Part shown: piece after piece, positions 42,972 through 55,726 of the stretch
How positions within the stretch are numbered: position 1 is the first letter of the stretch
Layout of the letters: each line of letters opens with the position of its first letter
IMG/VR virus record: IMGVR_UViG_3300019776_000324
Span: 280,245-344,244 of that record
DNA: 64,000 bases
Reading direction: 5' to 3' (one strand)
The notes under the pieces: generated by a model
The model's database searches: none
The model's input: only the letters and a program-made list of their open reading frames with translations
Told to the model about the DNA's origin: nothing
Position numbers and translations under genes: made by a program

Positions 42972-42987
42972 CTTATAAGTAATTATA

Positions 42988-43340
42988 GTTTCGCATTTTA
43001 GTAAAAATGCGTGGTGGGTCGGGCTTTAAAGAATTGTTGTAATTCCTTCGTAGGGAAGGCGCTGTGGACCCGGGTTCGATACCCGGCATCTCCACCGAAA
43101 GGTATTAGGTTAGTATTTTTCGGTGGGGATGAAATGGATTCGACATGGTGAGATACTGAAAGAGGCAACACGGTAGGCGATGACCGTAAATCAAGCAAAT
43201 CTCGTAAATGCAAAAGCATCTACAGGCGAAGTAACTGTTTCAGGCAAGAGCGTTAAGTTCTCTGCTCGTACAGCGAAAGCTTCTTTAGCAGTTTAATCAC
43301 TGCTTAGGGTAGGAAATACCTCGTAACAGAAACAACCTAA
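42988..43340 (+). ncRNA. ssrA: Circularly permuted (two-piece) tmRNA; tag AKASTGEVTVSGKSVKFSARTAKASLAV* at 43210-43296
   Basis: T-arm and CAUCUCCA (43070-43094) lie before the 5' end GGGGAUG (43125); acceptor stem with G3-U70; GGAUUCGAC; UAAAU-GCA resume context. Confidence 0.88.
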
Positions 43341-43366
43341 AACGGCACTTAATTGTGCCGTTTTTC
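43339..43366 (+). terminator. Intrinsic terminator after tmRNA
   Basis: AAAACGGCAC-TTAATT-GTGCCGTTTTT. Confidence 0.8.
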
Positions 43367-43411
43367 TTGACAAAAACATTTTATAGTATATACTTAGACA
43401 GTATAAATAAT
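43367..43411 (+). promoter_or_regulatory. sigma70 promoter followed by a TATAAATA late promoter
   Basis: TTGACA-16-TATACT; TATAAATA at about 43403. Confidence 0.5.
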
Positions 43412-43602
43412 ATCTAGCAACGCCAGCGGAGTTCTAGCTGACGTCGGTTTCTTAGGACGCTTTGGGTTCCCCCATTTATCAGTTTACTGTAACGCCCTTC
43501 CGTGTGTGAATCCTTCACTAGCATATTTTTTACGCATACAGTTTACTTCACTAAGTAGTTTACTGTATTATGTCACAATTTTTATATAAGGAAAAATCAA
43601 GC

Positions 43603-44772
43603 ATGAAAAAGCTATTATTAGCATTAACCGCAGTACTGGGAGTGAGTGTTGCTCATGCCCAATCTAGCGTTACCATTTACGGTCTATTAGATGTAGGCTA
43701 TATTGGTACTAGCTACAAAGGTGTTGGAACTTCAGCAACCAATAAACAAACTACTAACACATTTGGCCAGAGTGCTGAAAGTCCAAGTCGTTTAGGTTTT
43801 AAAGGTAGTGAAGATTTAGGTGGCGGCAAGTCTGCTTTCTTTACAATTGAAACAGGTTTAACTCCGTCCAACTCAACAGCATCAACTTGGAACAACCGTC
43901 AAAGTTTTGTCGGTCTTAAACAAAATGGCCTCGGCGAAGCTGCTATCGGTACTCAGTATACTCCAATTTTTAGTGCTGTAGCTAGAACAGGTGCTAACCA
44001 AGCAAACGACCTAGTAGGCGATGTAATCATGGGTGGTAATCCTCAGTTGTTCGGCAACAATGGATCTGGAACTTATGGTACTACTGCTTCTGCTAACGGT
44101 ACAGATTCTGGTTTCACTGTTCGTACATCAAACACTTTAACTGTTAAATCCGAAGACTTCAAAGGATTTGTAGGTAAAGGTTTTGTAGCAATGAACAACC
44201 AAAATACTACACAAACTAACTCAACCACAGGTGGCACAAATAATGCGTCCGGTTGGGGCTTAGGTGTTGATTACACTTGGAACAAGTTGTTAGTAACAGC
44301 AAACTACCAAGCATTGAAGAGCTTGCAAACAGCTGCTACTCCTACTAACCCTGCTCCAGCTTACTGGAACACTGCTAGTGGTGGTACAAACACACAAGAC
44401 AATCAAACATACATCGGTGGTGTATATGACTTTGGTATCTTGAAGGGCTATGCTCAGTATATCAACCGTAAAGCAACTGATACATTGAACACTGGCTACT
44501 TTGCTCAGCGCCGTGCTGAACAGATTGGTGTTCGTGGATTCTTTACTCCAACTATCGAAGGTTGGGCAAGTGCTGGTGTTGGTAAAGTAACAGCATTCGG
44601 TGCTGGTCAACCAACAGCTAACTTCACTGGCTATCAGTTAGGTTCAAACTACTGGTTAAGCAAGCGTACAAACTTGTATGCTATGTACGGTCAGACACAA
44701 ACTGCAAGCACTTCTGCTGCTCCAGCGTTAGCTGCTAGCAACTATGCAGTAGGTCTTCGTCACACATTCTAA
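43603..44772 (+). CDS. Gram-negative trimeric porin (betaproteobacterial type)
   Basis: Signal peptide; SSVTIYGLLD; SRLGFKGSEDLG; WNNRQSFVGL; LSKRTNLY; C-terminal GLRHTF. Confidence 0.92.
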   Translation: MKKLLLALTAVLGVSVAHAQSSVTIYGLLDVGYIGTSYKGVGTSATNKQTTNTFGQSAESPSRLGFKGSEDLGGGKSAFFTIETGLTPSNSTASTWNNRQSFVGLKQNGLGEAAIGTQYTPIFSAVARTGANQANDLVGDVIMGGNPQLFGNNGSGTYGTTASANGTDSGFTVRTSNTLTVKSEDFKGFVGKGFVAMNNQNTTQTNSTTGGTNNASGWGLGVDYTWNKLLVTANYQALKSLQTAATPTNPAPAYWNTASGGTNTQDNQTYIGGVYDFGILKGYAQYINRKATDTLNTGYFAQRRAEQIGVRGFFTPTIEGWASAGVGKVTAFGAGQPTANFTGYQLGSNYWLSKRTNLYAMYGQTQTASTSAAPALAASNYAVGLRHTF

Positions 44773-48211: not shown

Positions 48212-49243
48212 TTACAATGTTTGTGGAGTTTTAGACATTTCCCAGTTGCCACAAGTATCTACACAAGTGTAAATTCGACCATCAGCAATTGAATCTTTGC
48301 TCCAAGACTCTTCAACTTGATTAAACCATGCAATACAATGTTCTAAGCTGTAGTCAAGTGCATTGTTTTCTTTAACAATATCTACTAGTTGTTCATTGCC
48401 AGGATGATGCATTGTAGTAGGATAAAATCCAAGATAACAACAAGGGTAAACTGTACCATCTGCGGCCAGATATAGTTCTTTCTGTCGCTTATGATTACAT
48501 CCGATGGTAAGTGTTGGTGTGTCTTTTGCATGTTTAATAGTGTTTTTATCAAACCAAGTTATATGGCTTTCTAACATGGCACTAACTGGAGGTGGTGACA
48601 AATGTTCTTCCGGAGTTCTATTACCAATCCAGTGACTAAATGTTCCATCTCGATTGTACACTGGTCCACGATCTCGCCCTTCATTGATATTATCAAATGC
48701 CCAGAAGCCTAATTCTTTGGCCAGTCTGCGGCACTCTTGTTCTTGATGTCGATTGTGATCAAATGGAATCCAACGCCATATTGCCTGGCCACCTGCACGA
48801 ATAAATGCCTGTGCGTTTTCAATGATGGTATGCCAGTTGGTGTCTTGTCTGTACAAATGATGAGTGTCGGCTAGTCCATCCAAAGCAAACCCTACTTTAA
48901 CTCCAGGTAATGCTAGCTGAGCCCACCAATCTGGTGTACGCATACTACCATTGGTGCAAATGTTTATTGTTGGAACTTGGTTTTCGACCAGATACTTGAC
49001 AATCTCAACCCCATCTTTGGCCAGACCAAAATCTCCTAGGTTACCATTGAACAATATTCTTTTAATTTGTTTTAAAAATTCTGGAGTTAATATTTTTTTA
49101 ATGTTGTCTAAGCTAAGTTCAGTTACAGGATAGCCACTGTTATAGTCTATTCCTCGGTAGTTCCGCATACACATCGGGCAACGGGCATTACATCTTGTAG
49201 TTAATTCTATTTGTAGTTGTTCTATTTCTGGCAATGTAAGCAT
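48212..49243 (-). CDS. Radical SAM protein
   Basis: CNARCPMC; C-terminal PCCYLG..C.DTC SPASM-like motif; likely start MLTLPE. Confidence 0.85.
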   Translation of the reverse strand: MLTLPEIEQLQIELTTRCNARCPMCMRNYRGIDYNSGYPVTELSLDNIKKILTPEFLKQIKRILFNGNLGDFGLAKDGVEIVKYLVENQVPTINICTNGSMRTPDWWAQLALPGVKVGFALDGLADTHHLYRQDTNWHTIIENAQAFIRAGGQAIWRWIPFDHNRHQEQECRRLAKELGFWAFDNINEGRDRGPVYNRDGTFSHWIGNRTPEEHLSPPPVSAMLESHITWFDKNTIKHAKDTPTLTIGCNHKRQKELYLAADGTVYPCCYLGFYPTTMHHPGNEQLVDIVKENNALDYSLEHCIAWFNQVEESWSKDSIADGRIYTCVDTCGNWEMSKTPQTL

Positions 49244-49354: not shown

Positions 49355-49383
49355 TTGACAAGGTATAAATAAACCTATACAAT
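49355..49383 (+). promoter_or_regulatory. sigma70 promoter with an embedded TATAAATA late promoter at the head of the tRNA region
   Basis: TTGACA-17-TACAAT. Confidence 0.7.
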
Positions 49384-49394
49384 AATACTTTATT

Positions 49395-49529
49395 ATGATA
49401 CATTTAAACACATATTCTTATTGCGTAGCAAATTCAGGGAAACAGCCCGTGCCAGCCAATTGGCTCCACACAGCGGCATCCTTTAGCATTCGCGGCAATA
49501 TGGATTTATCAGAGGGTTGGGATGATTAG
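49395..49529 (+). CDS. Putative 44-aa attenuator leader peptide
   Basis: MIHLNTYSYCVANSGKQPVPANWLHTAASFSIRGNMDLSEGWDD*; its 3' end overlaps the antiterminator 5' strand. Confidence 0.5.
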   Translation: MIHLNTYSYCVANSGKQPVPANWLHTAASFSIRGNMDLSEGWDD

Positions 49530-49589
49530 ACAGTAATATTATTATAGTTTAATCATACAACCCTGGAACTAAACACTCCGGGGTTTTTT
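49513..49589 (+). terminator. Mutually exclusive antiterminator/terminator (attenuator-like)
   Basis: AGGGUUG/CAACCCU plus AUGAUUA/UAAUCAU competes with CCCUGGA/UCCGGGG-U6. Confidence 0.7.
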
Positions 49590-49607
49590 ATTTAGAGAAA
49601 AGGATTT

Positions 49608-49784
49608 ATGCAGACAGATTATACAAAATTGAACGATCGTATTGTAAAACAGGCTTACGAAGTTAGTAACTTAATATTAACAGAAGCCATGAAAACAAGA
49701 CTGTTTCAGAATAAGATTGATCGAGCTCGTGAAATGATTGAAGCAAGGAAACTTAGCCCAGCATTTTTTAACGATAGCTTCTAA
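49608..49784 (+). CDS. Hypothetical 58-aa protein
   Basis: SD AAGGA; MQTDYTKL...FNDSF*. Confidence 0.5.
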   Translation: MQTDYTKLNDRIVKQAYEVSNLILTEAMKTRLFQNKIDRAREMIEARKLSPAFFNDSF

Positions 49785-49892
49785 GATCAAGTAGCAAGTG
49801 TTATAGGAAACGAGATCCTGTACTACACTATAACTAGTACAAATGGGCGGCCTATCGGATGAAACTCCTTGTGTGGAGCGAAAAATGGTAGC

Positions 49893-49959
49893 GTAATAAA
49901 GCACACTGACTATAGGCGTGCCTAACTGTTTTGATCAAACAGATAGTGTGCTTTATTAC
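49893..49959 (+). repeat. Long-stem hairpin element A
   Basis: GTAATAAAGCACACT...AGTGTGCTTTATTAC. Confidence 0.6.
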
Positions 49960-50017
49960 ACGCATTCAGGAACCAAATGGGAGTGAAACATCCGTGGCAG
50001 AGTGCGTAACAAATAAT

Positions 50018-50101
50018 GGAGTGGAAGCATCAATGGTGATGCACTGGACTGTAAATCCGGCGCCTACGGCACGACTGGTTCGATCCCAGTACACTCCACC
50101 A
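50018..50101 (+). tRNA. tRNA-Tyr(GTA)
   Basis: Cloverleaf with long variable arm; CCA. Confidence 0.9.
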
Positions 50102-50109
50102 ACAGATAA

Positions 50110-50188
50110 CTCGGTGTAGGAAAGTCTGGTTTAATCCGCCTGCTTTGGGAGCAGGAGAGCGAAGGTTCGAATCCTTCTACCGAGACCA
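50110..50188 (+). tRNA. tRNA-Pro(TGG)
   Basis: Cloverleaf; CCA. Confidence 0.9.
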
Positions 50189-50194
50189 AAATTT

Positions 50195-50270
50195 GGGGTT
50201 GTAGCTCAGCTGGGAGAGCAACTGCTTTGCAAGCAGAAGGTCAGGGGTTCGATCCCCCTCTTCTCCACCA
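50195..50270 (+). tRNA. tRNA-Ala(TGC), two U-U mismatches in the acceptor stem
   Basis: G3-U70; CCA. Confidence 0.85.
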
Positions 50271-50393
50271 AATTGTAGTTGTGACGATGGTACTAAGTTG
50301 CTAGAAGCTTAGTCTGACGGCTGGTTAGGGATACACGGTGTCCGCGGTATAAGTGAACCAGAACTTCGAGTGCTGATAGGTAAGCTATCTACT

Positions 50394-50496
50394 ATATTGA
50401 AATACATTATTAAAGAGTGCTCTTGTCGGAGACACACTCTTATCTGGACCGACAACTTCCGGGCGTAGCGCCGTTACGTTTAGTGTGTTTCAATAT
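50394..50496 (+). repeat. Long-stem hairpin element B
   Basis: ATATTGAAATACATTA...TAGTGTGTTTCAATAT, 16 bp with G-U pairs. Confidence 0.6.
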
Positions 50497-50504
50497 GGTA
50501 ATAT

Positions 50505-50581
50505 GTATCGCATCGTCTAAGGAAGGATACGGGACAGCACGAGCCCTAGATGTAGGTTCAAGTCCTACTGTAGATACACCA
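50505..50581 (+). pseudogene. Degenerate tRNA-like element (anticodon unclear, possibly Arg ACG)
   Basis: Intact T-arm and ACCA end; disrupted anticodon and acceptor stems. Confidence 0.5.
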
Positions 50582-50752
50582 TACACATAAACATTCCAAC
50601 AACAAACGGTAAGAGCAAATTAAAATTCCGTTGAGTTGTGCGAGGTCAATGTATTTGCTCTCCGATACCTCTGAGTGTTTAGTTGTATGGTATGACTCTG
50701 CTGGGTATGAATCAGATTCTCCGGTGGGTAAGTTACTGCCATACAATATTAT

Positions 50753-50830
50753 GCAACGGTGGCAGAGAGGCCCAATGCAAGGGACTGCAAATCCCTAAAA
50801 CCGTAGGTTCAAATCCTACCCGTTGCTCCA
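50753..50830 (+). tRNA. tRNA-Cys(GCA)
   Basis: Cloverleaf; U73; CCA. Confidence 0.9.
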
Positions 50831-50832
50831 GG

Positions 50833-50861
50833 TTGACATAGACACTAAAAGTCTATATAAT
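50833..50861 (+). promoter_or_regulatory. Consensus sigma70 promoter within the tRNA array
   Basis: TTGACA-17-TATAAT. Confidence 0.8.
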
Positions 50862-52310: not shown

Positions 52311-52694
52311 ATGCCAATATCAACTTGTAAAAATTGTAGTGAAGAATTTAAGCACGGCTACACAAGCACAGGAGTCTATTGTTCTATAAAATGCACTAAA
52401 GAAGGACAACGCAAAGACAGACGACAAAATTTTCTCGAAGGGAAAATGGTTAATCGTGGACTAATGAAAGCGCATCTAGTAGACATATACGGATGGCAAT
52501 GTGCATGCTGTAAGGGGAAGACCTGGCAAGGTCAACTAATTCCACTAGAGCTAGATCATATTGACGGAAATGCTGGTGATAACAGGCCTGAAAATTTGAG
52601 ATTGTTATGTCCAAATTGCCATTCGCAGACGCCAACACATAAAGCAAAAAATAAAGGAAACGGAAGAGGCAGTAGAGGACTTCCGTGGTATTAA
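52311..52694 (+). mobile_element. Free-standing HNH homing-type endonuclease gene
   Basis: C..C zinc motifs; LELDHIDG...DN..ENLRLLCPNCH; SD GGAGG. Confidence 0.85.
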
Positions 52695-52878: not shown

Positions 52879-53352
52879 ATGAAGTTCAATATTCCACACA
52901 TTAAACAATTTATAGAAGCGCAAGGTCCAAACACTCGTATCTATATTGGTGTGGATAGTGAACGAGTTCGAGGCGCTGACAAGCAATGGTATGCTGTATA
53001 TACTGCCGCTATTGTTGTACACATCAATGGTAACAATGGTTGTAAGTTATTTGGCGAAGTATCTCGTGAGCGTGACTATGATCGTGTAGATCGTCCTAAC
53101 ACTCGCTTGATGACCGAAGTGTATAAAGTAAGCGAACTATACTTGAAACTAGCAGAAGTATTGGAAGGCCGTGCTGTGGAAGTTCACTTGGATATTAACC
53201 CAGATGATCATCACGCTAGTAGCAATGTAGTGGCGCAGGCTATCGGTTATATTCGTGGCACTTGTAATGTAGAACCTTTGGTTAAGCCTCGTGCATTTGC
53301 CGCAAGTTATGCCGCAGACAGAATGAGAAGTTTGAAGGTTGCTAACGGCTAG
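52879..53352 (+). CDS. RNase H-like protein (YkuK/DUF458-like)
   Basis: IYIGVDS; RLMTEV; VEVHLDIN; AASYAAD. Confidence 0.7.
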   Translation: MKFNIPHIKQFIEAQGPNTRIYIGVDSERVRGADKQWYAVYTAAIVVHINGNNGCKLFGEVSRERDYDRVDRPNTRLMTEVYKVSELYLKLAEVLEGRAVEVHLDINPDDHHASSNVVAQAIGYIRGTCNVEPLVKPRAFAASYAADRMRSLKVANG

Positions 53353-55697: not shown

Positions 55698-55726
55698 TTG
55701 ACAAATAAACCCATTTCGGGTATAAT
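55698..55726 (+). promoter_or_regulatory. Consensus sigma70 promoter (copy 1)
   Basis: TTGACA-17-TATAAT; near-identical to 57361. Confidence 0.85.

What the first reader, a model, noticed from the sequence alone, without database searches (positions are those of the whole stretch)
49355..49607. Leader-peptide attenuator in front of the tRNA array; the leader contains all 20 amino acids
Seen: promoter, then a 44-codon ORF (49395-49529) that uses all 20 amino acids. Its last codons form the 5' strand of a long hairpin (49513-49564) that sequesters the 5' arm of a strong U-tailed terminator (49561-49589). Known: in trp/his attenuation, ribosome position decides between antiterminator and terminator. 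Inference: complete translation terminates transcription, while stalling from depletion of almost any tRNA, for example by host anticodon nucleases, allows read-through into phage tRNA genes. That would make it a general translation-stress sensor. Caveats: the leader has no SD (near-leaderless), and an internal promoter at 50833 serves the later tRNAs.
Basis: partly seen in the sequence, partly recalled or inferred. Interest (0 to 1): 0.8.

Follow-up and report, generated by a model that had tools for sequence, protein, structure and literature searches.

The report
Translation-sensing switch before phage tRNA genes
A giant freshwater phage and dozens of relatives place a tiny translated reading frame and an either/or RNA hairpin switch in front of their tRNA gene clusters. 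This probably lets the phage transcribe more tRNA genes whenever ribosomes slow down.

Summary
It consists of a near-consensus promoter, a 44-codon ORF holding all 20 amino acids, a hairpin (49513-49564) and a U-tailed terminator (49559-49589). Hairpin and terminator share 49559-49564, so they exclude each other.

Relatives turn this into a conserved element. A scan for the terminator motif gave 98 unique viral copies. Seventy-three have a promoter and an ATG-started ORF of 20-49 codons. In 68 the ATG lies 5-11 nt after the -10 box, which implies a leaderless mRNA. In at least 4 others a 5'UTR with a Shine-Dalgarno precedes the ORF. In all 68 leaderless copies the stop codon lies 27-36 nt before the terminator.

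Both helices covary. All 41 copies with enough flank have tRNA genes within 2 kb, some 8 nt after the U-tract; 0 of 15 non-leader terminator copies do.

Eleven of 23 leaders of at least 40 aa hold all 20 amino acids (about 0.5 expected). Leader codons modestly match the downstream tRNAs.

No conserved anti-antiterminator exists, so read-through is the default and a ribosome reaching the stop codon causes termination.

The function is inferred, not measured. No such element was found in Rfam or in the searched papers. It is a new variant of leader-peptide attenuation.

The parts
49355..49383 (+). Sigma-70-type promoter: -35 TTGACA at 49355-49360, 17-nt spacer, -10 TACAAT at 49378-49383. The predicted transcription start is about 49390-49392.
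   Evidence: scores it 11 of 12. GGTTGACA and the -10 box align across 18 relatives. All 68 leaderless copies were picked by a promoter pattern of this type.
49395..49529 (+). Leader ORF of 44 codons plus TAG, with no Shine-Dalgarno and an ATG 11 nt after the -10 box (leaderless or nearly so). It holds all 20 amino acids. The presumed sensing zone is about codons 1-35. The last 9 codons overlap or abut the antiterminator 5' arm.
   Evidence: The ORF is kept in 73 of 73 leader-type copies. Third codon positions vary most (301/316/467). Frames +1 and +2 are stop-free in 0 and 11 of 68 copies.
49513..49564 (+). Antiterminator hairpin: outer helix 49513-49519 with 49558-49564, inner AT-rich stem 49522-49556. 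The stop codon (49527-49529) lies in its 5' strand.
   Evidence: z = -3.1; 63 of 68 relatives sequester the CCC; 24% do so in shuffles; 90.1% paired, 52 double-change cells against 22.7, 0 of 500 shuffles reach the observed score.
49559..49589 (+). Intrinsic terminator: stem 49559-49567 with 49577-49585, conserved 9-nt loop 49568-49576, T-run 49584-49589. Its 5' arm (49559-49564) is shared with the antiterminator.
   Evidence: It is 99.8% paired, and the free positions covary with no C:A or A:C combination. The same module ends an unrelated gene of about 135 aa in other viral contigs.
49608..49784 (+). First gene after the terminator: a 58-aa helix-loop-helix protein of unknown function (AAGGA at 49600-49604). 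It belongs to a family with invariant L32, K36, R39 and A40.
   Evidence: No hit in Pfam, PHROGs, PDB sequences or PDB folds. It is absent in lineages where a tRNA follows the terminator directly.
50018..50830 (+). The tRNA genes that lie before the next consensus promoter: Tyr 50018-50098, Pro 50110-50188, Ala 50195-50270, Cys 50753-50830. The array continues to 60775.
50833..50861 (+). Internal perfect-consensus promoter directly ahead of tRNA-Asp. It gives attenuator-independent expression of later tRNAs.

Best explanation
This is a ribosome-mediated (leader-peptide) transcription attenuator that gates a phage tRNA gene cluster.

Proposed mechanism:
1. Host RNA polymerase starts at the strong promoter. 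The transcript begins at or a few bases before the AUG, so a ribosome can load without a Shine-Dalgarno.
2. As the polymerase moves on, the RNA by default folds into the antiterminator hairpin. This hairpin locks up the 5' arm of the terminator, and transcription reads through into the 58-aa gene and the tRNA genes.
3. If the ribosome keeps pace and reaches the last codons or the stop codon, it covers or unwinds the 5' strand of the antiterminator. The shared segment is then free to form the terminator, and transcription stops.

Fast translation therefore shuts the tRNA operon down. Slow, stalled or absent translation opens it. That makes a negative feedback from translation capacity to tRNA supply.

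What is shown and what is inferred:
- Shown from sequence: the anatomy, its conservation and covariation, the coding signature, and the invariable tRNA context.
- Inferred: the start site, translation of the ORF, terminator activity, and the direction of the switch.
For: - Anatomy in the window.
- Conservation: the terminator motif alone retrieved 98 unique viral copies. Of these, 68 have a consensus promoter and an ATG 5-11 nt after the -10 box (54 of them at 6-7 nt). Their ORFs run 20-48 codons, and the stop lies 27-36 nt before the terminator motif.
- Second start mode: five further copies keep an ORF without a leaderless start. Three of them clearly encode the same peptide family. Four have a 5'UTR of about 50 nt with AAGGAA or AGGAA 6-8 nt before the ATG. 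Translation signals are thus kept in two ways.
- Coding signature: differences by codon position are 301/316/467. Synonymous changes make up 47% of single-base codon changes, against 22% expected. Frames +1 and +2 are open in 0 and 11 of 68 copies.
- Antiterminator: the CCC is sequestered in 63 of 68 copies (60 of 68 in full-leader folds), against 24% in shuffles. The partner GGG lies 3-13 nt before the stop in most copies and 20-26 nt before it in 8 copies. Covariation is 90.1% paired, 52 against 22.7 double changes, score 0.349 against 0.204, 0 of 500 shuffles, and slid registers reach at most 59%.
- Terminator: 99.8% paired. The free Y:R position shows T:A 40, C:G 30, T:G 28 and never C:A.
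- Energies suit a switch: median -17.4 (antiterminator) against -14.3 kcal/mol (terminator).
- Context: 41 of 41 copies have a same-strand tRNA within 2 kb, against 0 of 15 non-leader copies. In eight listed loci the tRNA starts 8-35 nt after the motif's T-run, leaving no room for another promoter.
- Sensor content: 11 of 23 leaders of at least 40 aa hold all 20 amino acids, against 0.5-0.6 expected, in 6 of 10 families.
- Match to the array: leader codons are read by the first 8 downstream tRNAs more often than by other families' arrays (0.336 against 0.257, p = 0.0017). They are also read more often than codons of long ORFs in the same locus (0.341 against 0.265, p = 0.006).
Against: - No experimental or transcript data were available. 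The start site, translation, termination efficiency and direction of regulation are all inferred.
- The terminator loop (9 nt) is long for an efficient intrinsic terminator.
- The peptides are under moderate purifying selection. This could mean the peptide itself has a function.
- In 8 copies the GGG arm lies 20-26 nt before the stop. A terminating ribosome would not cover it directly.
- In this window the ATG is 11 nt from the -10 box, so the mRNA may carry a 3-5-nt leader, which is poor for leaderless initiation in E. coli.
- Perfect internal promoters at 50833, 55698 and 57361 mean much of the downstream tRNA region (the sub-arrays and the genes between them) does not depend on read-through.
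- The window's own family shows no codon-level excess match to its tRNAs.
- The copies are phylogenetically related, in about 12 peptide families, so the counts overstate independence.
Confidence: 0.72

Rival explanations
1. The ORF is an ordinary, independently functioning micro-protein gene with its own promoter and terminator. The preceding hairpin only stabilises the mRNA. tRNA genes follow because this unit happens to mark the start of the tRNA region. A dual role as both peptide and attenuator is also possible.
For: Purifying selection acts on the peptide: 47% synonymous changes against 22% expected. Motifs recur across families, such as a mid-peptide Trp, QP, and G/E/D-rich ends.
Against: - Peptide length (20-48 aa) and sequence vary widely, while the geometry of stop codon, hairpin and terminator is fixed.
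- The hairpin shares six bases with the terminator and covaries with it.
- tRNAs start 8-35 nt after the T-run in several lineages, so they need read-through.
- No Pfam or PHROG family matches.
- The G/E/D-rich ends are explained by the G-rich RNA arm.
Confidence: 0.12
2. The terminator is a constitutive or temporally controlled partial stop. A phage- or host-encoded factor, for example the 58-aa protein or a factor that recognises the conserved loop, would relieve or enforce it independently of leader translation.
For: The 9-nt loop is conserved even where the module follows an unrelated gene. A conserved small helical protein is the first downstream gene in most lineages.
Against: - This does not explain the conserved ORF, its two modes of translation start, or the fixed position of the stop codon inside the antiterminator.
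- The small protein is absent where tRNAs follow directly.
- The module after the roughly 135-aa gene has no antiterminator.
Confidence: 0.08
3. The leader is a translation-independent RNA switch (riboswitch-like, T-box-like or protein-binding), and the ORF is incidental.
For: Terminator/antiterminator pairs are typical of riboswitches. The regulated genes are tRNAs, as the T-box logic might suggest.
Against: - There is no Rfam hit at E <= 1.
- The region before the hairpin varies from about 45 to 130 nt and shows a coding signature rather than a conserved fold.
- The ORF is open in all 73 leader-type copies. Frame +1 is never open over that span in the 68 tested.
- Variants with a Shine-Dalgarno exist.
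Confidence: 0.05
4. The 44-aa peptide is a RiPP precursor for the divergently transcribed radical-SAM/SPASM enzyme (48215-49243, minus strand).
For: The neighbouring gene hits Radical_SAM (2e-10) and weakly hits SPASM, which are domains typical of peptide maturases. It starts about 150 nt from the leader on the opposite strand.
Against: - Only 6 of 61 leader copies with enough upstream DNA have the enzyme next to them.
- Only 9 of 80 radical-SAM loci carry the terminator motif.
- By contrast, the link to tRNA genes holds in 41 of 41 copies.
Confidence: 0.02

Closest known systems
Leader-peptide transcription attenuators of amino-acid operons (trp, his, leu, thr, pheA, ilv of enterobacteria; established knowledge)
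   Same: A short ORF close to the promoter. An intrinsic terminator whose 5' arm can instead pair in an antiterminator. Ribosome position on the leader chooses between the two structures. A ribosome at the stop codon favours termination, and a ribosome stalled earlier favours read-through.
   Different: - There are no runs of one regulatory codon. The leaders are unusually diverse, often holding all 20 amino acids.
- There is no conserved segment 1 (anti-antiterminator), so an untranslated leader should read through rather than terminate.
- Initiation is leaderless.
- The regulated genes are tRNAs in a phage, not biosynthetic enzymes.
uORFs and attenuators that sense general translation stress (toiL of E. 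coli, PMC12121999; antibiotic-induced attenuators such as vmlR, PMC9226507, and msrD, bioRxiv 10.1101/2021.11.29.470318)
   Same: A short ORF reports ribosome slowing of many causes rather than the lack of one amino acid. The output is more expression of a downstream gene.
   Different: toiL acts through occlusion of the ribosome-binding site and Rho-dependent termination. The known cases control resistance or toxin genes in bacteria. Here the output is an intrinsic terminator in front of phage tRNA genes.
Leaderless polycysteine short ORFs of mycobacteria (Cys 'ribulon', bioRxiv 10.1101/834739)
   Same: A sensory short ORF on a leaderless mRNA, placed as the first cistron of an operon. Ribosome pausing remodels the downstream RNA structure.
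   Different: Those ORFs are Cys-specific and act on translation by sequestering the ribosome-binding site. This element acts on transcription termination and is not specific to one amino acid.
T-box riboswitches (established knowledge)
   Same: A terminator/antiterminator switch that couples tRNA status to genes of the translation supply chain.
   Different: A T-box binds uncharged tRNA directly and needs no translation. No T-box or other Rfam model matches here, and a translated ORF is conserved instead.
Inducible tRNA L-array (trn operon) of Anabaena PCC 7120 (PMC8421152)
   Same: A horizontally spreading tRNA gene array whose transcription rises when translation is impaired.
   Different: It is bacterial. 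A term search of that paper found no 'attenuat', 'leader peptide', 'terminator' or 'uORF'.

Membership tests
Ribosome-mediated (leader-peptide) transcription attenuator | A short ORF close to the promoter, with a credible translation start | tested here: met
   In 68 copies the ATG lies 5-11 nt after the -10 box (leaderless). Five more copies keep an ORF without a leaderless start, four of them with a 5'UTR and a Shine-Dalgarno. A coding signature is present.
Ribosome-mediated (leader-peptide) transcription attenuator | An intrinsic terminator between the leader ORF and the regulated genes | tested here: met
   A 9-bp GC-rich stem followed by T6 at 49559-49589. It is 99.8% paired across 62 relatives, with covariation. 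Terminator activity itself was not measured.
Ribosome-mediated (leader-peptide) transcription attenuator | An alternative antiterminator that is mutually exclusive with the terminator | tested here: met
   The segment 49559-49564 is shared by both helices. The CCC is sequestered in 63 of 68 copies, against 24% in shuffles. Covariation: 0 of 500 shuffles reach the observed score.
Ribosome-mediated (leader-peptide) transcription attenuator | An ORF placed so that ribosome position decides which structure forms | tested here: met
   The stop codon lies inside the hairpin's 5' strand, 27-36 nt before the terminator motif, in 68 of 68 copies. The GGG arm lies 3-13 nt before the stop in most copies.
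Ribosome-mediated (leader-peptide) transcription attenuator | Leader codons related to what the operon supplies | tested here: inconclusive
   There are no codon runs. Diversity is above chance (11 of 23 leaders hold all 20 amino acids). There is a modest codon match to the downstream tRNAs (p = 0.002-0.01). The window's own family shows no excess, and Asp/Glu lie outside the sensing zone.
Ribosome-mediated (leader-peptide) transcription attenuator | Read-through depends on translation of the leader | not testable with these tools
   This needs reporters, Term-seq or ribosome profiling.
trp-type four-segment attenuator | A segment 1 that pairs with segment 2 (anti-antiterminator), so that an untranslated leader terminates | tested here: not met
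   The best pairing between the ORF and the 5' arm is no better than in shuffles: median p = 0.68, mean -6.7 against -7.3 kcal/mol. Only the window and its closest relative have a candidate, at p of about 0.04-0.05.
T-box or other curated RNA family (Rfam 15) | A match to a covariance model | tested here: not met
   No match at E <= 1 within 49355-49607.
RiPP precursor with a radical-SAM maturase | Conserved co-occurrence of the peptide gene and the maturase gene | tested here: not met
   Found in 6 of 61 leader copies and 9 of 80 radical-SAM loci.

The most novel reading that the evidence does not exclude
The leader peptide is a tRNA-supply meter tuned to the tRNA genes it controls. Its codons sample the isoacceptors encoded downstream: all 20 amino acids where the array covers all 20, and a restricted G/E/L/D/N/A/V/T/P set where the array holds only those. 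Each phage would then autoregulate transcription of its own tRNA array through the speed at which those tRNAs decode the leader. Loss of tRNAs, for example through host shut-off or anticodon nucleases, would automatically switch the array on.
Probability: 0.35. Interest if true: 0.9.

Novelty: new variant of a known kind. Interest (0 to 1): 0.8.

Why it matters
Why phages carry tRNA genes has been debated for decades. The main ideas are codon compensation, replacement of degraded host tRNAs, and escape from tRNA-cleaving defences (PMC10264068, PMC11555353). How phage tRNA arrays are regulated is essentially unknown.

A conserved switch that couples array transcription to ribosome progress makes a clear prediction. 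The arrays should be induced when decoding slows. Reporters, starvation or tRNA-cleaving nucleases can test this directly.

The element would also extend classical attenuation in three ways:
- to a new output, namely tRNA genes;
- to a new kind of sensor, a leaderless leader that samples many or all amino acids rather than one;
- to a simpler two-state logic with no anti-antiterminator.

It is compact, about 235 nt, and could serve as a portable reporter of translation speed.

Tried and rejected
- GenBank phages: megablast and blastn found no relative of the leader. Only tRNA genes matched.
- Rfam at E <= 1: nothing in the element.
- Contiguous-run test for arm complementarity, own against other copies: weak (5.4 against 4.5). 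Many helices have bulges, and G/U-rich arms pair promiscuously. I replaced it with fold-based and column-based tests.
- Anti-antiterminator search: negative.
- RiPP-precursor idea: rejected on co-occurrence.
- Bacterial genomes: of 89 stretches with the motif, nearly all are unrelated GGAG...CUCC terminators. The phage-type loop appears in only four loci (L221, L230, L252, L257). Of those, L221 and L230 have tRNA genes downstream and look like mis-binned phage contigs. No host was identified.
- The 58-aa protein: no hit in Pfam, PHROGs, PDB sequence search or Foldseek. The model is a helix-loop-helix with pLDDT 81.
- The roughly 135-aa gene that precedes the non-leader terminator copies: no informative PHROG.
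- Literature: five of the seven searches looked for an attenuator before phage tRNA genes and found none. The other two were for background.

Full report
**The observation**

The window is part of IMG/VR contig IMGVR_UViG_3300019776_000324, a 344-kb phage (100% match). It has no close relative among GenBank phages.

- Promoter: TTGACA-17-TACAAT at 49355-49383 (11 of 12).
- ORF: 49395-49529, 44 codons plus TAG. It contains all 20 amino acids (p of about 0.03).
- Hairpin: outer helix 49513-49519/49558-49564 and an AT-rich inner stem. The stop codon lies in its 5' strand (-23.6 kcal/mol, z = -3.1).
- Terminator: 49559-49567/49577-49585 plus T6.

Six bases (49559-49564) belong to both helices, so only one of them can form. 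In the window the antiterminator region is the more stable: -21.5 against -13.1 kcal/mol (row L081).

A 58-codon gene with AAGGA before its ATG follows at 49608-49784. Then come tRNA-Tyr (50018-50098; Rfam and BLAST), Pro, Ala and Cys. Then comes a perfect consensus promoter at 50833, followed by the rest of a tRNA array of about 29 genes.

**Relatives**

Proteins flanking the element retrieved 94 viral loci. nhmmer found the leader region in 25 of them.

The alignment shows several things:
- a conserved promoter;
- an ATG just after the -10 box;
- a variable ORF;
- a hairpin of variable sequence;
- a very conserved terminator, including its loop.

Together with the loci fetched earlier, this gave 98 unique copies with enough flank.

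None of the upstream features were part of the search pattern, yet 68 copies share the following:
- A TTGAC-type promoter.
- An ATG 5-11 nt after the -10 box, at 6-7 nt in 54 copies. This is where transcription should start, so the mRNA would be leaderless.
- An ORF of 20-48 codons.
- A stop codon 27-36 nt before the terminator motif.

Five more copies keep an ORF without a leaderless start. In L141, L142 and L200 the peptide is clearly of the same family. Those three and L106 have a 5'UTR of about 50 nt with AAGGAA or AGGAA 6-8 nt before the ATG. In L185 the promoter is unclear.

Keeping a start signal in two different ways is hard to explain unless the ORF is translated. No leader-type copy lacks the ORF.

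**Coding signature**

Among 65 gap-free pairs of leaders, differences fall 301/316/467 on codon positions 1, 2 and 3. Synonymous changes make up 47% of single-base codon changes, against 22% expected. Frames +1 and +2 are stop-free in 0 and 11 of 68 copies.

**RNA switch**

- In 63 of 68 copies the CCC of the terminator's 5' arm is paired in the fold of the transcript made before the terminator's 3' arm exists. The figure is 60 of 68 with the whole leader and 24% in shuffles. The median z-score is -2.9.
- The partner GGG lies 3-13 nt before the stop in most copies and 20-26 nt before it in 8.
- On a 62-sequence alignment (A1) the outer helix is 90.1% paired. It has 52 double-change cells against 22.7 in shuffles, and a covariation score of 0.349 against 0.204 (0 of 500). 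Slid registers reach at most 59%.
- One caveat applies. The 5' ends of the aligned pieces were set from single-sequence folds, which favours the helix somewhat.
- The terminator is 99.8% paired. Its two free positions covary and never give a mismatch: T:A 40, C:G 30, T:G 28, no C:A; and A:T 78, G:T 12, G:C 8.
- Median energies are -17.4 (antiterminator region) against -14.3 kcal/mol (terminator). Full-length minimum-energy folds split 42 to 26 between the two states. This is what a switch should look like.

**Context**

All 41 leader copies with at least 2 kb of downstream DNA have a same-strand tRNA gene within 2 kb. The median distance is 355 nt, and up to 26 tRNAs lie within 6 kb.

By contrast, 0 of 15 copies of the same terminator module that end an unrelated gene of about 135 aa have a tRNA downstream. 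Those copies also lack the promoter, the ORF and the antiterminator.

In L102, L134, L140, L147, L190, L205, L212 and L213 the first tRNA starts 8-35 nt after the motif's T-run. That leaves no room for another promoter, so those tRNAs can be made only by read-through. This is the strongest argument that the terminator is meant to be leaky or regulated.

**Mechanism**

With the stop codon in its A site, a ribosome should cover about 15 nt upstream and 12-15 nt downstream. This footprint is established knowledge.
- In the window that span is about 49512-49540. It covers the whole 5' arm (49513-49519) and half of the inner stem.
- The terminator starts about 30 nt after the stop and stays free.
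- A ribosome that arrives in time therefore forces termination. A late, stalled or absent ribosome leaves the antiterminator intact.

I looked for a trp-like segment 1 that would pair with the 5' arm and make untranslated leaders terminate. Own-sequence pairing is no better than in shuffles (median p = 0.68). Only the window and its nearest relative have a candidate (p of about 0.04-0.05).

The family is therefore a two-state device whose default is read-through.

**What is sensed**

- There are no codon runs. Instead, the leaders are unusually diverse.
- Eleven of 23 unique leaders of at least 40 aa hold all 20 amino acids. The expectation is 0.5-0.6 under nucleotide shuffles, zone-restricted shuffles or windows of real proteins. 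The 11 fall in 6 of 10 peptide families.
- Leaders of 30-39 aa average 17.4 amino-acid types, against 16.0 expected.
- Leaders of 20-22 aa use only about 9-12 types. These sit directly before arrays restricted to Gly, Glu, Leu, Asp, Asn, Met, Ala, Val, Thr, Pro and Ile. In L102, 16 of 20 codons can be read by the 12 downstream tRNAs under strict wobble rules.
- Across 12 families, 97-98% of the amino-acid types in the first 6-10 tRNAs occur in the family's own leader, against 85% in other families' leaders (p = 0.01-0.03).
- Leader codons are decodable by the first 8 tRNAs more often than by other families' arrays (0.336 against 0.257, p = 0.0017).
- They are also decodable more often than codons of long ORFs in the same locus (0.341 against 0.265, p = 0.006). 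That control addresses shared codon usage.

These effects are modest, and the window's own family shows none at codon level. Asp and Glu are missing from the presumed sensing zone in 44 and 38 of 56 leaders. They occur in the tail, where the G-rich RNA arm dictates Gly/Glu/Asp/Trp codons. The sensor is therefore broad but not universal.

**Rivals**

- A RiPP precursor for the neighbouring radical-SAM/SPASM gene is rejected. The two co-occur in only 6 of 61 leader copies.
- A translation-independent riboswitch does not fit the variable length, the coding signature, the Shine-Dalgarno variants or the lack of Rfam hits.
- A free-standing micro-protein gene remains possible as a second role, given dN/dS of about 0.3.
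- So does factor-dependent control through the oddly conserved loop or the 58-aa protein. Neither explains the geometry.

The 58-aa protein is a helix-loop-helix (pLDDT 81) with invariant L32, K36, R39 and A40 and no detectable relatives of known function.

**Novelty**

Rfam has no such family. Searches of the paper library aimed at an attenuator before phage tRNA genes found none.

The nearest known systems are:
- classical leader-peptide attenuators;
- general stress-sensing uORFs such as toiL;
- leaderless Cys-sensing sORFs of mycobacteria;
- the Anabaena tRNA array induced by translation stress, for which no attenuator is described.

Among 185,579 bacterial and archaeal genomes the phage-type module appears in only four loci. 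Two of them (L221, L230) have tRNA genes downstream and look like mis-binned phage contigs.

I rate it a new variant of a known kind. The mechanism class is old. The output (tRNA genes), the setting (jumbo phages), the leaderless many-amino-acid sensor and the two-state logic are new.

**Limits**

- All functional statements are inferences from sequence.
- The copies fall into about a dozen related families.
- In this window, internal consensus promoters (50833, 55698, 57361, 59211) mean the switch directly gates only the 58-aa gene and four tRNAs. It would add to, rather than solely control, the rest of the array.

Noticed in passing
window 49785-50017: The 233-nt spacer between the 58-aa gene and tRNA-Tyr folds very stably (-68.7 kcal/mol, z = -3.8, 0 of 200 shuffles). 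The fold includes a stem of about 16 bp formed by an inverted repeat near 49892-49907/49945-49960. There is no Rfam match. It may be an unknown structured RNA or a processing element within the regulated transcript.
   Followed up: partly
window 50018-50098: Rfam finds a tRNA here (36.5 bits), and BLAST matches the annotated tRNA-Tyr of Limnohabitans phage DC31 at 84% identity. ARAGORN missed it. It is the first tRNA after the attenuator.
   Followed up: partly
window 49568-49576, and loci such as L096, L126 and L201: The 9-nt terminator loop (A-C-T-A-A-A-C-A-C, or with A-A-A-A-A-C) is nearly invariant. The same hairpin module also ends an unrelated gene of about 135 aa, of unknown function, in other viral contigs. 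Such loop conservation is unusual for an intrinsic terminator and is unexplained. It might be a factor-binding or processing site.
   Followed up: partly
window 49608-49784: The 58-aa helix-loop-helix protein family (invariant L32, K36, R39, A40) is the first gene after the terminator in most lineages. It is absent where tRNAs follow directly. No homologue of known function or fold was found.
   Followed up: partly
window 42983-43387: The phage encodes a tmRNA of the two-piece (permuted) betaproteobacterial type (Rfam 129 bits; ARAGORN gives a tag peptide). This hints at a betaproteobacterial host and at further investment in translation rescue.
   Followed up: no
window 43570-44772: A 400-aa ORF with a strong Gram-negative porin domain (Porin_4, E = 1e-35) lies in the phage genome.
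   Followed up: no
window 50833, 55698, 57361, 59211: Four consensus or near-consensus sigma-70 promoters (three of them perfect 12/12) lie inside or after the tRNA region. Those at 55698 and 57361 share an almost identical 29-mer. Each is followed by a gene with a Shine-Dalgarno or, at 50833, directly by tRNA-Asp.
   Followed up: partly
window 49361-49377 and aligned relatives: The spacer of the leader promoter carries a conserved A-T-A-A-A-T-A block across divergent relatives. The other strong promoters in the window lack it, which hints at an extra promoter-specific signal.
   Followed up: no
window 50271-50752: A gap of about 480 nt between tRNA-Ala and tRNA-Cys has no convincing ORF, tRNA or Rfam hit. 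I did not examine it.
   Followed up: no
window 52311-52694 and 52879-53352: An HNH endonuclease gene and an RNase H-like gene are interspersed among the tRNA genes.
   Followed up: no
L221 and L230 (contigs of a Haliscomenobacter MAG); L257 (a Usitatibacteraceae MAG): These are three of the four bacterial-genome records (with L252) that carry the phage-type terminator loop. L221 has 13 tRNA genes downstream and is probably a phage contig binned into the MAG. L257 has no tRNAs nearby and might hint at the host lineage.
   Followed up: partly
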